From Octopus sinensis (taxonomy: Eukaryota), in the NCBI RefSeq assembly GCF_006345805.1, contig NC_043009.1, positions 5,828,001 to 5,892,000 of the forward strand: 64,000 nt of DNA, in the 5' to 3' direction. A program made the position numbers and the translations under genes. This document shows positions 52,551 through 57,855 of this stretch, one piece after another. The notes beneath the pieces are model-generated. The model was not told the DNA's origin and did no database searches. It saw only the letters and a program-made list of their open reading frames with translations. How positions within the stretch are numbered: position 1 is the stretch's first letter; each line of letters begins with the position of its first letter.

Positions 52551-52808
52551 TTATTTCTTTATTACGATTATACAATCGTTACATAGAAGGACAAATACAG
52601 GACATACATGCAAAAAAACAGTTAAGAGATTCGATTAAAAATTTTCCATAACATTTGGATTATTCATTATAAAAATTCGTCTATAAATTGTCCTTTACGT
52701 GACCAATAGAATATTAAAACATTTTATAACCTTTCGATCTTACCGAAGTTTTAAACCCCGGCAATTTATAAGGCCCCGCAGCTTTTGTTTCCTCTACTCC
52801 CTCCATAG

Positions 52809-55800
52809 TTAAGCTGGGTTTCTGACACCCACCTTTTTTTCCACTTCCTTCCATCTTTTCTCATACACACCCCGTGGTAGGATCCTCTTTTCCAGCCCCA
52901 TTTTGCTCTTCAGATGATATCTGAAGTAAGTGAGCAAGCCGGGGCCCGAGACAAAGGATCCTATCGCGACTCCTTCCATTCTTGTTCGCCACATGCATTC
53001 TTTTACTACTGCAACCGTGCAGTGAAAACATGCCTCACCTTCCTTCGAGAGTCCAGTTGGCGGTATCATCTTAATCATAGACTCAGCCGACAGCTGTACT
53101 CGTCCCAGATGCGATAACACGTGTTCTGCGTAACTTATCAAGTCGGACAACTTCCGACAGTGTACAAAAGCGTGCTGGACGGTTTCATCGTCCAACTCGC
53201 ACCTTGGACACGTCGGTGGCACTGAAATTCCGTGCCGCGATAACTTCTCGCGAACAGGTAAAGCATTCCTATAGCACTGCCAGGCCAGGGATCTTTGGAA
53301 ATTATCCAAGTACCCCGTCCTGAAAGTCTTTTTAACAGGTTGGTAAGCTGGTCTTCGTCAAACCCCAGAGCCCCTCCTAGGACGTCGTCGTTCTTTGCCT
53401 CTACCAGCCTTCTATAAAATAAGAGGTGGTATTTCCGCAGCCGGCCTTGCCCGCCTTGTGGATCAGCGTGAGTGCCTGTCGGCACTCCTTTTGCCATAAA
53501 GTCAGTTTCCATCTTTTGATGCGACCGGGTTTAAAATTCACTAAGGAGGCCGGTCTCGGGAAAAATTCCCCTGCCAGCGGACTCCACACCTTATCACCCT
53601 CCAGGTGGTGCCAGAGATGCTTCAGCCTCAACGCATGTCTGCGCATCATCAACCAAGGCATTCCTAACCCACCCTTTAACGGTTCCTGGCAGCAAACGGA
53701 GCGCCTCACAAGTGGCTTTCCTCCCTTCCACAAAAAGCGGAAAAGGATTCGCTCCAACTTGCTAAGCCATGAATCGGGGCAAGGGACAACGGTCAGGCGG
53801 TAAGTGATTACAGATGCAATGAACATCTGTACCACCTCCACCCTTCCTTTCAAGGACAGAAACCTTCCGGACCAGGTCCGTACTATGGCCTCCACCTTGC
53901 TCGTCACCTCACTCCAGTTCCTCTCCGTTTGGGAGTCTGGCCCAAACCAGACTCCTAGCAACTTAACAGGGCCATCCGTCCAGTGTCCCACGACACTGGA
54001 CGATATCGACTTGCTCCTCCAGGTGCCGAGGCGCAAGCCAACCGACTTGTCCTTGTTAACCTTTGCTCCTGCCACCGCCTCGTATCCTCTGATAGCCTCT
54101 TCCACACAAGGTAGCTGGGCCTCATTGGACACGATGAGGGTGACGTCATCCGCATAAGCAGTAACCGTCCTCCCACCTCCGATCTCATCCGAGTTACTTC
54201 CCAGCCTCTCCAACTTTCGCAGCAATGGCTCAAGAGCCAACACGTACAAAAGTGGTGACAAGGGGCACCCTTGACGAACTGAACATTCGATCGAAAACGG
54301 TTCCGTTAGGTAACCGTTTATCTGGACGGTGGACTTGATGCCGCTATACATAGCGGAGATCCACCCGCGAAATTCAGGGCCCAGTCCAGCCGCTTCGAGG
54401 ACCGTCGCCAGGTACTCATGGTCTACCCTATCGAACGCTTTACTTTGGTCTAAATGGACCATTACCCCCCCCCCTTGCCGGTTAATTTACCCACCCTATC
54501 TAAGGTGTAGCGTATAAGGTGAAGATTGTCCTGGATCGACCTGCCTGGAATTGCACATGTCTGTGCTCTCCCTACAAGTTTCTCCACGACAACCGTCAAC
54601 CTTTTTGCCAACACCTTGGCCAAAATCTTTAACTCTACATTAAGTAGAGTTATGGGCCTGTAGTTACTAATGTTATCCCCCTTGCTCGGGTCTTTCTGGA
54701 TTAGCGTCACCACTCCCCGGCTTACAGAACTGGGAATTCTCCCATTCTGCTGCCAGTTCGTGTAGACGCCTGCCAATATTCCCCCGAACAAGTCCGGCAT
54801 ACTTTGGTAAAACTCGTAGGGCAGACCATCCAACCCCGGCGACTTCTCCCCGGCGCATCCGGCCAGTATCCCCTCTATCTCCGCGGGAGTGATCGCTTCT
54901 TCCACAGCACTCCACCTCACGCCCCGAGAGCCGCGGTCCGCCGGCCAGGAAGTCCTTTAAGGTCCTCCCCCGCTCCGGCGCCACACCACCCCCGAACACG
55001 CGGGCGAAATGCTGGTGAAGAAACTTTTGCATCTCCTCCTGTCCATAGATCTTTTGTCCCTGTTCGTCAGTTAAAGACTTGATTGAGGCTTTGTTACCTC
55101 TCTGACTCTCCACTCGACGGGCCCATCCGGCAACGTTAATACCTTCTCGTTTCCCAGCGCGTAGCTTAGCTCTGACTCTGCAACCTTCGTGTTTGGAGTT
55201 AAGGTGACGGTACAATACCGTCCTTGCCGCCATCACTCCGGATGCAGAGCCAGCTTCCATTGCCTCGTTTAGATTCTTAACTAAATCGTCCTCTATCCTA
55301 GACCTATCTAACCTTAGCTGATTGCTAAATCTAATGGACTCTGAACGAATGGCTCTTTTGAGGGAGTGCCACCATCTATTGTTAATGATGGTGCCACACA
55401 ATGCCCTCTGTACTAACACCTTAATCCGGGTACGGAAGTCTTCACAATTCAAAATAGCCTTGTTCAGCTTCCAGTACCCGGGTCCCTGTCTATGACACTT
55501 GTCTAATTGCATCCTACACGTCACAAATTTGTGATCCGTGTAAGGCACAATGTGAAACTGTGGACAACTAAACGTATCCTTATCTCTTTTCTTAATAAAT
55601 ATCCTATCTAAATACGATCTGTGTGAGCCGTCGTTGTTACTCCACGTCCACTGTGGAACGCTCGGCTCATCCAGTCGGTAACGGTCCACTAGATCAAAGC
55701 TCTCTAGTAGACCCTTGAGGCTAGGGTTCCCCTTCCTATTGGTTGAGCCAACACTGTCGACCCGCGCTTCAAGGACAGTGTTAAAGTCCCCTACTAGGAT

Positions 55801-56198
55801 TACCGTTTTCGACGTCGCTAAAAAGGGCTCCAGGTTCCGAAAAAACCCGTCTGTCTACTCTCGTTCGGAGCGTAGACAGCTACCAACCTGAAGGACTGTT
55901 TACTTACGTGGGTCACATCCAGAACAACCAGCCTGCCTTCTGGGTCCAGAAAGACAGTACTTACCTGCAAGTCCAAGCTCTTCCTGATAAGGACTGCCAC
56001 GCCTCTGCCTCTTCCTCGGCTAGGAGAAATAAATTTCTCGAACCCATTTAGAAGAGGCGAGAACGCTTGGGCCTCGTTCATCTTGGACTCGGTTGCAATA
56101 GCTATGTCTACTCCATGTGTCGTGAGGTCGTCCAGGAAGCAAATTTGTTTCCATTCCGACCCCATTCCACGTACATTCACACAACCCAGCTTAGCCAT
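52809..56198 (-). CDS. LINE ORF2: apurinic-type endonuclease + reverse transcriptase + C-terminal zinc finger (5 single-base frameshifts)
   Basis: EN motifs CVNVRGM, VYAPN, LVGDFN, SYLDRIF, YTDHKFV. RT motifs NYRPITLLN, LDQSKAFDRV, VRQGCPLSP, AYADD, KLLGV. C-terminal CPRC..ETVQHAFVHC. No in-frame stop was found once frames are switched. Confidence 0.93.
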
Positions 56199-57655
56199 TG
56201 TCGGTGAGAGAAAAAATAAATGAACTTACGGTTGAGAAAGGGAGCATGACAGTTTAATCTGCCCGCTTCCCCTTCTTCCTCCCTTGTGGTCGTAGCTGCA
56301 GGGCTCTTAACCGGCGTTGCCACCGGGCTCTGGGTAGGTGTGGTTGCCGGGGTTATCACAAGTTTACCCTCCAGTACTTCTTTTGTTACATCTCTAATCA
56401 GTCTATTCTTTAGATGTTCCTGCAGTACTTCCTCCTTCCACTCGTCTTCCTCCCACTTTTGCGAAGCGAGTGGTTGCTTTGTCTGTAGCCTTGCTAAATA
56501 GTTTAAATTTTGAAAATTTATAGTATTTATATACCCTTTCGTTTTTTTCATCAAAAGCAATGATCTTATCATTTTTTTTTAAAGACTTTTTCACATCTTG
56601 TTTTATGGGGAGGGGCTTGGCGAACTGTTTCCCAATGAATACAGTGCCATGGGGGTAGGGCTGAGGAATTTGCTTTGTGTGTGTGTCTGCGGTGCTTGCT
56701 GATTTTTTCCTTGTTTGGGGAGGGGAGTCCAGGGTGTTGTCTTTTTTTCTTTTGTGTGTCACCTGTGTAAAATCCATTTGTTCGGTACAATCCGTTTCTG
56801 TTTCTTTCCTTGTCGTCGTCTTGTTTTCTTTTTCCGCCTTCTCCCCTTCAGTGTTAGAAGCACTTTGAGGAGGGGCTTCATTGGTTTTCTTTTTTTTTAA
56901 GCAGTTCGAGCGGACGTGACCCTTCTCGCCACATTTAAAACATCTAGGTCTGCGCCCCTCCACTGACACTCTCATGGACGTTCCATCTTCGTTAAATATC
57001 CTATCGGGCAGGTTCTCCAATATCTTGTTTCTGCCTGAACGAGGAGTTCCAGCGTCTGTCCCTTCCAGCGTACCTCCTCTTTCCTTCTCATCTGCAGAAT
57101 CGAAATTTCCCGCTCTACATTGTGCAGGACCGCCGCTGCTACCCACATAATATCATACCCTCTCGGTATGTCCTCTACCAGCAGTTTAGCTGTTCTTTTT
57201 CCCATATACGAGGGTAACAGCATGATATCATCATTTTTCAGGGTCAATGATGACACCTCTCTTGCTACCTCAGCCGAGTCAAAATGTGCTTCAACAGTAG
57301 CACTGCGAGCACCTCGAACGACATGGCGAATTTTGTCCCACACCGGGGACAAGCACTTTTCGACAATTTCGTTTCTGACGTCCATAATTTTCGTTTCTTT
57401 GTAGCTATACACTTTGTATATAACTGTTTTTTCCTTTATTTCTTGTACCTTCGCTTGCGGCGGTACAAGTTTGATCTCGTTTCCTTCCATTTTCACCAAG
57501 TTCCTAAATTCGAATAGTTGTTCGATCTTGAATTCAACGTCCATCATGGTTCCGCCTACCGCGGCCGAAAATGACTGTTTTGTTACTTCAGTGTCCTTTA
57601 ATTCACTTGTTCCCATCGCGGGAAAATCATTCTTCGACGCCAAGTCGAAATCCAC
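56177..57655 (-). CDS. LINE ORF1 (Gag-like nucleic-acid-binding protein with CCHC zinc knuckle), frameshifted in this sequence
   Basis: Joins ORFs 57655-56972, 57146-56403 and probably 56572-56177. CFKCGEKGHVRSNC lies at 56942-56901. The first ATG is at ~57616. There is a frameshift at the T3 run 57028-57030 and a second near 56.5 kb; the true end is uncertain. Confidence 0.8.
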
Positions 57656-57855
57656 TTCCCAAAAAATGTCTCAAAAATTACCTCGAAGGCAACAACAATC
57701 CCAAATACAGAACTTTCCTTTCCCGAAATGCAATTCGTAAAAGTTCGCCATTTACAGGATGTAATATATGTAAACTCACCCATGTGCTTCGTTGATGTTG
57801 ATCAGTTAGCTGATCGGCTTAAGCGGGGCAGGGTCGTTTATTTATGATACATTCG

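What the first reader, a model, noticed from the sequence alone, without database searches (positions are those of the whole stretch)
52551..57710. Tx1/L1-clade LINE inserted inside the ribozyme array: possible retrotransposon that targets a retrozyme repeat
Seen: both LINE junctions are ribozyme-repeat sequence. The 3' end abuts ...TGTGATGCTCTC (52550) and the 5' end abuts AACTTTCC (57711). About 170 bp (plus any whole units) of repeat are missing between these points, and there is no target-site duplication. The LINE is antisense to the hammerheads of the main array. Established: Tx1-clade LINEs are often sequence-specific for multicopy targets (Keno in U2 snDNA, Mutsu in 5S rDNA, Dewa in tRNA-array spacers, Tx1L in the Tx1D transposon). 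Inference: this may be a family specialised on a ribozyme array, a target class I have not seen reported, or it may be the enzyme donor that mobilises the repeat.
Basis: partly seen in the sequence, partly recalled or inferred. Interest (0 to 1): 0.88.

Follow-up and report, generated by a model that had tools for sequence, protein, structure and literature searches.

The report
Dead LINE nested in ribozyme repeat
A broken L1/Tx1-type jumping gene really does sit inside a tandem array of hammerhead-ribozyme repeats, but it looks like an ordinary one-off nested insertion, and nothing testable here shows that it targets or mobilises the repeat.

Summary
A 5,160-bp two-ORF non-LTR retrotransposon lies on the minus strand at 52551-57710. 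It interrupts a ~476-bp tandem repeat whose forward units each carry a canonical type I hammerhead on the plus strand. Both junctions are repeat sequence in the same orientation. About 168 bp of one unit (plus possibly whole units) is missing, and there is no target-site duplication. The element is an L1-superfamily LINE: APE, RT, zf-RVT and a CCHC ORF1, with human L1 ORF2p as best solved-structure match. It is dead, with at least 6 frameshifts. The Tx1-clade label could not be tested.

No second copy of this family could be found in any reachable collection, so target specificity is untestable here. Indirect evidence leans against it. Relatives at 45-62% amino-acid identity, including a near full-length copy in Argonauta hians, lie in flanks with no hammerhead or repeat similarity. 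All 9 other copies of the site in the window are empty. The junctions look non-canonical. LINE remnants are frequent enough (about 1 per 20 kb) that chance is adequate.

The "enzyme donor" idea is weak. The array has a Penelope-like insertion signature: an inverted leader copy and (TA)n on both sides.

The parts
52551..57710 (-). L1-superfamily (L1/Tx1-group) non-LTR retrotransposon, 5,160 bp, apparently near full length, degenerate
   Evidence: Single copy in the window. Pfam hits: Exo_endo_phos (weak), RVT_1, zf-RVT, zf-CCHC. Frame map against relatives shows 5 frameshifts in ORF2 and 1 in ORF1.
56403..57616 (-). ORF1 in two overlapping frames, with a CCHC zinc knuckle at about 56901-56945. 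A 5' UTR of about 95 nt lies upstream (57617-57710), with an in-frame stop.
   Evidence: zf-CCHC, E = 1.9e-4. 28% identity to the ORF1 of the Argonauta hians relative. No homologues by word-based search. AlphaFold model unusable, pLDDT 33.
55500..56198 (-). APE-type endonuclease domain of ORF2, with a frameshift at about 55842 in a T6 run
   Evidence: Pfam PF03372 at E = 0.006, below the curated cut-off. tblastn match to the APE-bearing protein of relative L005. Best solved-structure matches are L1 endonuclease and L1 ORF2p.
53947..54680 (-). Reverse transcriptase domain of ORF2, split by a frameshift in a G10 run at about 54465
   Evidence: RVT_1 at 3.6e-21 and 2e-7. Human L1 ORF2p at 4e-27 against R2 at about 1e-14.
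52809..53309 (-). C-terminal part of ORF2 with the zf-RVT CCHC motif (CPRCx8Hx4C, about 53151-53291) and the stop codon
   Evidence: zf-RVT at 2.3e-10. Nearest named relative is an Argonauta hians hypothetical protein at 53% identity.
52551..52808 (-). 3' UTR. It holds a terminal hairpin (52564-52579) followed by AATAAAGAAATAA, with essentially no (ATT)n tail.
   Evidence: Relatives end AATAAAAGAAAT followed by (ATT)4.7 in L006 and by more than 30 ATT units in L002.
52410..52550 (+). Left flank: a 139-141 bp forward partial repeat unit holding only the 3' half of the hammerhead. It ends at the nick site ...GATGCTCTC.
51870..52411 (-). Inverted leader, about 1.07 repeat units in reverse orientation. 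Its hammerhead (52016-52063, minus strand) carries CTGATCA, a G8-to-C change that should be inactive.
57711..61022 (+). Main forward array of about 7 units that are 96-100% identical. Type I hammerheads lie at 57855-57902, 58326-58373, 58803-58850, 59282-59329, 59757-59804, 60233-60280 and 60706-60751.
   Evidence: The monomer RNA 58367-58843 folds at -136 kcal/mol, z = -6.5.
51751..51878 (.). (AT)n microsatellite at the left edge of the array
61018..61150 (.). (TA)n microsatellite at the right edge of the array

Best explanation
This is a single, incidental, now-dead insertion of an L1-superfamily LINE into a pre-existing hammerhead ('retrozyme') tandem array.

Shown:
- The LINE is contiguous from a short 5' UTR to its conserved 3' terminus and interrupts the array.
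- The plus-strand 3'-OH at ...GATGCTCTC (52550), exactly between two 23-bp sub-repeats, is joined directly to the cDNA of the LINE 3' end.
- The 5' end is joined 168 bp (plus n units) further along, with no TSD and almost no (ATT)n tail.

Inferred:
- Integration was by target-primed reverse transcription with non-canonical resolution. This was either a deletion-associated event or an endonuclease-independent, break-repair type event, possibly favoured by the inverted-repeat junction 139 bp away. Later intra-array recombination may also have remodelled the junction.
- The array itself was laid down earlier by a Penelope-like mechanism, not by this LINE. The evidence is its head-to-tail units, its inverted truncated leader copy and the (TA)n on both sides.
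For: Anatomy.

LINE identity: Pfam domains and best solved-structure matches to human L1 ORF2p for the APE, linker and RT regions.

Dead copy: 5 frameshifts in ORF2 and 1 in ORF1, of which only 2 lie in homopolymer runs of 6 or more.

Non-canonical junctions: no TSD, a 168-bp loss, and a tail reduced to about 'TAA'. Relatives carry (ATT)4.7 to more than 30 units. Absence of TSDs, target deletions and atypical sites are the described hallmarks of endonuclease-independent L1 insertions (PMC1920257).

Chance is sufficient: at least three LINE-type RT remnants lie in 64 kb. A 4.3-kb array would therefore be hit with probability of roughly 0.2. LINEs make up 12.9% of an octopus genome, with 13 recently active L1-Tx1 families (PMC13282606).

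Relatives are not associated with ribozyme repeats. The 9 other identical sites in the window are empty.

Array architecture matches the published features of Penelope-like element (PLE) insertions (PMC8557442). Animal retrozymes are argued to be PLE derivatives (bioRxiv 10.64898/2026.07.22.740005; PMC7229834).
Against: Only one copy of the family could be examined, so specificity is untested rather than refuted.

The nick site CTCTC|TGGCA is G+C-rich in a genome of about 33% G+C. It does not resemble the T-rich sites of non-specific L1 endonucleases, which is what a sequence-specific enzyme would also produce.

The relatives examined are different families (45-62% amino-acid identity), probably from other species.

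The chance estimate rests on one window.
Confidence: 0.6

Rival explanations
1. This is a target-specific family. The LINE's endonuclease recognises the GATGCTCTC|TGGCATG site of the retrozyme unit and the family lives in these arrays, as Tx1-clade elements live in U2 genes, microsatellites, satellites or other transposons.
For: Many Tx1-clade families are target-specific, and satellites are among the known targets (PMC4494074). The nick site is unusual for an AT-rich genome and lies at an invariant position between two 23-bp sub-repeats. The short 5' UTR of about 95 nt is compatible with reliance on read-through transcription.
Against: There is no second copy to compare. Nine of the ten sites in the window are empty, with no truncated 3' remnants. 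The large deletion and lack of a reproducible junction structure do not fit well. Relatives sit in unrelated flanks. Tx1 membership itself is untested. The antisense orientation rules out co-transcription with the ribozyme strand.
Confidence: 0.15
2. This was a canonical TPRT insertion with a short TSD. Later unequal exchange, gene conversion or deletion within the tandem array removed one TSD copy and about 168 bp.
For: Units are 96-100% identical and fall into two interspersed subtypes, so the array has been recombining or homogenising. An inversion junction lies 139 bp from the LINE.
Against: Both LINE termini are intact to the last base that can be judged. The near-absent tail would still need a separate explanation.
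Confidence: 0.15
3. The LINE family is the enzyme donor that mobilises the retrozyme in trans.
For: PMC7229834 leaves LINEs open as possible mobilisers. The repeat unit contains AATAAGAAATAATTATTTT on the hammerhead-sense strand, which resembles the LINE-group terminus AATAAA(A)GAAATAA(TTATTATT). The last 62 nt of the LINE align end to end with unit positions 7-61 at borderline significance, p about 0.05 against genomic background.
Against: The similarity is marginal and AT-rich. It is not significant against shuffles of the UTRs. This copy is dead. The array has the tandem, inverted-leader and (TA)n architecture described for Penelope-like elements and not for LINE TPRT. The literature favours PLEs. 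The unit ends do not coincide with the motif.
Confidence: 0.05
4. This is an assembly artefact: a LINE-containing sequence was wrongly joined into a collapsed repeat array.
For: Tandem and inverted PLE-type structures are known to cause assembly problems (PMC8557442). Two of the frameshifts lie in long homopolymers.
Against: Neither junction lies in sequence shared between the LINE and the repeat. Both flanks have the same orientation and a phase explained by one simple deletion. Reads could not be examined.
Confidence: 0.05

Closest known systems
Target-specific Tx1-clade LINEs (Tx1L in Tx1D, Keno in U2 snRNA genes, Kibi/Koshi in (TC)n/(TTC)n, Tx1 families in satellites and DNA transposons; Kojima & Fujiwara 2004; Kojima 2015, PMC4494074)
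   Same: An APE-type, two-ORF LINE of the L1/Tx1 group found inside a multicopy repeat.
   Different: Specificity in those families is shown by many copies at one site (20% or more of flanks). Here there is one copy with a 168-bp target loss. Clade membership is not established. A hammerhead or retrozyme repeat is not a reported target.
L1-Tx1 LINEs of octopod genomes (Octopus vulgaris repeat annotation, PMC13282606) and the Argonauta hians relative (locus L006, GCA_054771915.1)
   Same: Same domain organisation: ORF1, then an APE-RT-zf-RVT ORF2. About 66% nucleotide and 53-62% amino-acid identity. Shared terminal AATAAA(A)GAAAT motif preceded by a small hairpin.
   Different: The relatives carry an (ATT)n tail and L006 lies in unique, non-retrozyme sequence. 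The window copy has almost no tail.
Endonuclease-independent or deletion-associated L1 insertions (Morrish 2002, from memory; Sen et al. 2007, PMC1920257)
   Same: No TSD, loss of target DNA, an insertion site unlike the usual consensus, and a reduced tail.
   Different: Those events were described for human L1. The endonuclease preference of this family is unknown, so 'atypical site' cannot be judged. The 3' terminus is not clearly truncated and no extra nucleotides are evident.
Metazoan non-LTR retrozymes (Cervera & de la Pena 2020, PMC7229834)
   Same: Tandem AT-rich units, each with a type I hammerhead. The monomer RNA is highly self-paired.
   Different: The unit of about 476 bp is longer than the reported 170-400 nt. 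Rfam models do not recognise the motif (stem II starts with A10.1-U11.1). Expression and circularity are untested.
Penelope-like element insertion architecture (Craig et al. 2021, PMC8557442)
   Same: Head-to-tail partial tandems, an inverted 5'-truncated copy at the upstream end, and insertion into (TA)n.
   Different: No PLE ORF (RT/GIY-YIG) was identified in the window, though this was not searched exhaustively. The array is non-coding.

Membership tests
L1 superfamily (L1/Tx1 group) non-LTR retrotransposon | ORF2 with an N-terminal APE endonuclease, a central RT and a C-terminal CCHC (zf-RVT) domain, in that order | tested here: met
   Pfam RVT_1 at 3.6e-21 and zf-RVT at 2.3e-10. Exo_endo_phos reaches only 0.006, below its cut-off. 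The APE is confirmed by tblastn to a relative's APE protein and by L1 endonuclease / ORF2p matches.
L1 superfamily (L1/Tx1 group) non-LTR retrotransposon | RT and thumb region closer to L1 ORF2p than to other LINE groups | tested here: met
   Human L1 ORF2p at 4e-27 over residues 2-329, against R2 proteins at about 1e-14 over the RT core only. This compares solved structures only and is not a phylogeny.
L1 superfamily (L1/Tx1 group) non-LTR retrotransposon | ORF1 of the RRM + CCHC ('type I') kind | tested here: inconclusive
   A CCHC knuckle was found. The RRM was not shown: no Pfam or PDB hit, and the AlphaFold model has pLDDT 33, with only a beta-alpha-beta-beta-alpha-beta order.
Tx1 clade | RT phylogeny clusters with Tx1 references rather than with L1 proper | not testable with these tools
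   No Tx1 or L1 reference sequences (Repbase) were available. Homologues returned are unnamed.
Target-specific LINE (Kojima 2015 criterion) | The same target sequence in 20% or more of the flanks of the family's copies | not testable with these tools
   No other copy was found in the protein database (best 62% identity; 53% for the C-terminus), in metagenome contigs (one chance hit), or in viral or prokaryote-genome contigs.
Target-specific LINE (Kojima 2015 criterion) | Recurrent occupation of the same site within arrays | tested here: not met
   The 9 other GATGCTCTCTGGCATG sites in the window are intact. This is a small sample and weak evidence.
Non-LTR retrozyme | Tandem repeat units each carrying a type I hammerhead with a complete catalytic core and three helices | tested here: met
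   The descriptor hits all 7 forward units, with 0.05 expected per random window. The core is invariant across units.
Non-LTR retrozyme | Recognition by the curated hammerhead covariance models (Rfam) | tested here: not met
   No hammerhead family at the gathering score or at E<=10.
Non-LTR retrozyme | Low G+C and a highly self-paired monomer RNA | tested here: met
   G+C is about 31-34% across the array. MFE is -136 kcal/mol, z = -6.5 against shuffles.
Non-LTR retrozyme | Self-cleavage and expression as circular RNA | not testable with these tools
   Needs transcription and cleavage assays or RNA data.
Penelope-like (PLE-type) insertion | Partial tandems plus an inverted 5'-truncated upstream copy, with microsatellite (TA)n insertion bias | tested here: met
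   compared with PMC8557442.
Penelope-like (PLE-type) insertion | A related autonomous PLE (RT + GIY-YIG) whose pLTR is homologous to the repeat | not tested
   Only selected window ORFs were scanned. None looked PLE-like.
Endonuclease-independent LINE insertion | No TSD and loss of target DNA | tested here: met
Endonuclease-independent LINE insertion | Insertion site diverges from the family's endonuclease consensus, with 3' truncation or absence of a tail | tested here: inconclusive
   The family consensus site is unknown. The tail is almost absent relative to relatives, but the terminal motif is intact.

The most novel reading that the evidence does not exclude
The LINE belongs to a lineage whose endonuclease homes to the GCTCTC|TGGCATG site of a hammerhead-ribozyme (retrozyme) repeat. 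That would be the first LINE known to specialise on a circRNA-producing ribozyme array. A second possibility follows if the AATAAGAAATAATTATT motif in the repeat is a true mimic of the LINE 3' end: the two elements could be a parasite-host pair.
Probability: 0.13. Interest if true: 0.7.

Novelty: new member of a known kind. Interest (0 to 1): 0.3.

Why it matters
If the family proved site-specific, it would add ribozyme-bearing retrozyme arrays to the list of 'safe-haven' targets of Tx1-type LINEs. It would also give a handle on how two retroelement classes interact. As it stands, the locus is a clear example of a nested TE insertion.

The more useful by-product is the array itself. It is a well-preserved invertebrate retrozyme array, probably from a cephalopod. 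Its inverted leader copy and (TA)n flanks independently fit the recent proposal that animal retrozymes are mobilised by Penelope-like elements rather than by LINEs.

Tried and rejected
1. Searching for other copies of the family. Viral and prokaryote-genome contigs gave nothing by DNA or protein search. Protein searches with the RT, the C-terminus and ORF1 gave at best 62%, 53% and no hits respectively. The source genome is apparently absent from every reachable collection.

2. Rfam confirmation of the hammerhead. There were no hits at three sensitivity levels, so I replaced this with an explicit descriptor and a random-sequence control.

3. Tx1 versus L1 placement. No reference sequences were available and cluster look-ups gave no useful names.

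4. ORF1 fold. The single-sequence AlphaFold model had pLDDT 33 and was discarded, so no fold search was run.

5. A shared 3' tail between the LINE and the retrozyme. This was not significant against shuffles and only marginal against genomic background.

6. Reading the junctions as a long TSD of about 305 bp. I rejected this because the left forward flank is only 139 bp long and is not the closest match to the right-hand unit.

7. An interim deletion size of 177 bp taken from BLAST coordinates. I corrected it to 168 bp.

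
Full report
**Observation**

The sequence at 51800-58500 and a BLAST of one repeat unit and of the LINE against the whole window give this layout, from left to right:
- (AT)n at 51751-51878.
- About 1.07 repeat units in reverse orientation at 51870-52411.
- An inversion junction at about 52411, with 2 nt of microhomology.
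- A 139-141 bp forward partial unit ending ...GATGCTCTC at 52550.
- A 5,160-bp element on the minus strand at 52551-57710, single-copy in the window.
- About 7 forward units from 57711 to 61022, which are 96-100% identical.
- (TA)n at 61018-61150.

Aligned against an intact unit, the stretch missing at the insertion is 168 bp, equivalent to 58014-58181. There is no short target-site duplication. One base (T at 52551) could be LINE or target.

In a tandem array a 168-bp loss is formally equivalent to a duplication of about 305 bp. The left forward flank is only 139 bp long, and it is not the nearest relative of the right-hand unit. I therefore read it as a deletion of 168 bp plus n units.

**Is the repeat a ribozyme array?**

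Rfam gives no hammerhead hit at the gathering score, at E<=10 over 9.5 kb, or on a 101-nt slice. An explicit type I descriptor does find the motif. The descriptor requires an open stem I, CUGANGA, a stem II hairpin, GAAA, a stem III hairpin starting A15.1-U16.1, and H17.

It finds GGCCUG-CUGAUGA-AUAC(GUAA)GUAU-GAAA-UCA(CUG)UGA-UA|CAGGYC in all 7 forward units on the plus strand and nowhere else. About 0.05 hits are expected per random 64-kb sequence. The motif is invariant among forward units. The inverted unit carries CUGAUCA, which should be inactive.

The monomer RNA between cleavage sites (58367-58843) is strongly self-paired, at -136 kcal/mol and z = -6.5. This matches metazoan non-LTR retrozymes (PMC7229834), apart from the longer unit and the A10.1-U11.1 pair. 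That pair may explain the Rfam miss.

**What the element is**

The ORF pieces carry these domains:
- a CCHC knuckle in ORF1;
- Exo_endo_phos, at a weak score;
- RVT_1, at 3.6e-21 and 2e-7;
- zf-RVT, at 2.3e-10.

The best solved-structure matches for the endonuclease, linker and RT-thumb regions are all human L1 ORF2p or L1 endonuclease. The RT scores 4e-27, against about 1e-14 for R2. It is therefore an L1-superfamily LINE. Whether it falls in the Tx1 clade could not be tested for lack of references.

Mapping relatives' proteins onto the element shows five frameshifts in ORF2. In sense coordinates they lie at about 1866, 2800, 3237, 4290 and 4400. ORF1 has one more. Only two of the six lie in long homopolymers. 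This copy is dead.

The sense strand ends in a small hairpin followed by AATAAAGAAATAA.

**Relatives**

The closest RT homologues are 62% identical (unnamed JGI metagenome proteins). A large set at about 50% comes from ENA assemblies. The C-terminal search gives an Argonauta hians hypothetical protein at 53%. The host is therefore probably a cephalopod or another mollusc, though this is not established.

The A. hians locus L006 holds a near full-length relative, with ORF1 and an ORF2 at 5537-8966. It ends ...GGCTAATAAAAGAAATA(ATT)4AT and is followed by unique sequence. L002 ends ...AATAAAAGAAATC followed by more than 30 ATT units. The group therefore has an (ATT)n tail, which the window copy almost entirely lacks.

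None of the fetched loci (L001, L002, L004-L010) shows similarity to the repeat unit or contains a hammerhead motif.

**Target specificity**

The decisive test is the flanks of other copies, and I could not run it. No second copy exists in the window. Every reachable collection lacks the family.

The indirect evidence is as follows:
- The 9 other GATGCTCTCTGGCATG sites in the window are empty.
- The junctions are non-canonical. Sen et al. describe the lack of a TSD, loss of target DNA and an atypical site as hallmarks of endonuclease-independent L1 insertions at DNA breaks (PMC1920257). The near-absent tail is a further departure from the relatives. An inverted-repeat junction 139 bp away is a plausible fragile site, though this is inference.
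- LINE remnants are common here. RT fragments lie at 34106-34774 and 40271-40777. That is about one per 20 kb, so a 4.3-kb array is hit by chance with probability of roughly 0.2. Octopus genomes are 12.9% LINE, with 13 recently active L1-Tx1 families (PMC13282606).

In favour of specificity there are only two points. One is the prior that many Tx1 families are target-specific, with satellites already among the known targets (PMC4494074). The other is the G+C-rich nick site at an invariant position between two 23-bp sub-repeats.

I put specificity at about 0.13-0.15.

**Enzyme donor?**

The LINE UTRs show no significant similarity to the unit. An end-anchored alignment of the last 62 nt with unit positions 7-61 is only marginal, at p about 0.05 against genomic background. 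The same holds for a 14-mer shared between the unit (AAGAAATAATTATT) and the L006 terminus.

The array's own architecture is what Craig et al. describe for Penelope-like elements and state is not seen in LINE TPRT (PMC8557442). That architecture is head-to-tail units, an inverted 5'-truncated leader and (TA)n on both sides. A 2026 preprint argues that animal retrozymes are PLE derivatives. The 2020 paper already favoured PLEs. I therefore rate the donor reading at about 0.05.

**Verdict**

The most likely explanation is an ordinary, old, one-off nested insertion with non-canonical or later-remodelled junctions (0.6). The site-specific reading remains open but unsupported. The LINE family itself is a new member of a known kind. 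Interest is modest unless a genome-wide census shows recurrent insertion at the same site.

Noticed in passing
window 51751-61150: The whole retrozyme array is bounded by (TA)n on both sides. It starts with an inverted, truncated leader copy of about 1.07 units. This is the insertion signature described for Penelope-like elements, including their (TA)n bias.
   Followed up: partly
window 58058-58076 and the same position in the other units; also 52322-52333 (minus strand): Each unit carries AATAAGAAATAATTATTTT on the hammerhead-sense strand. This resembles the 3' terminus of this LINE group, AATAAA(A)GAAATAA(TTATTATT...). The motif lies inside the 168 bp deleted at the insertion. Statistically it is marginal, at p about 0.05.
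   Followed up: partly
window 52528-52550 and e.g. 57991-58036: The unit boundary holds a 23-bp tandem sub-repeat, TGGCATGTATGTGTGATGCTCTC / TGGCATGTATGTATGATGCCCTC. The LINE sits exactly between the two copies.
   Followed up: no
window 52016-52063 (minus strand): The hammerhead of the inverted leader unit has CTGATCA instead of CTGATGA, a change at core position G8. It is presumably catalytically dead. The first forward partial unit (52410-52550) retains only the 3' half of the motif.
   Followed up: no
window 34106-34774 (-) and 40271-40777 (-): Two further, unrelated reverse-transcriptase remnants are present (RVT_1 at 2e-5 and 6e-6). The first has a QYADD box and a C-terminal ...LRWSSHVVRM motif typical of other LINE clades. 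The window is TE-rich.
   Followed up: partly
window 36671-36913 (+): An ORF fragment contains ...PAYSLDLSPTDYHFFKHL..., which looks like the C-terminal part of a Tc1/mariner transposase. There was no Pfam hit at E<=0.01.
   Followed up: no
window 52564-52579; L002 about 1993-2005; L006 about 9166-9177: A small hairpin with a 4-5 nt loop lies immediately upstream of the AAUAAA motif at the 3' end of the window LINE and of two relatives. The stem sequences differ, so it may be a conserved RT-recognition structure.
   Followed up: partly
window 54465-54474 and 55840-55847: Two of the six frameshifts lie in G10 and T6 runs. They could be long-read homopolymer errors rather than mutations. The other four do not.
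   Followed up: partly
window-wide (e.g. 2787-3006, 24784-25070, 30282-30525, 33297-33542, 41987-42287, 43082-43594, 50371-50955): (TA)n, (TAA)n and (ATAG)n microsatellites are unusually frequent and long, and overall G+C is about 33%. The nearest named LINE relative is in Argonauta hians. Together these suggest a cephalopod or mollusc source.
   Followed up: no
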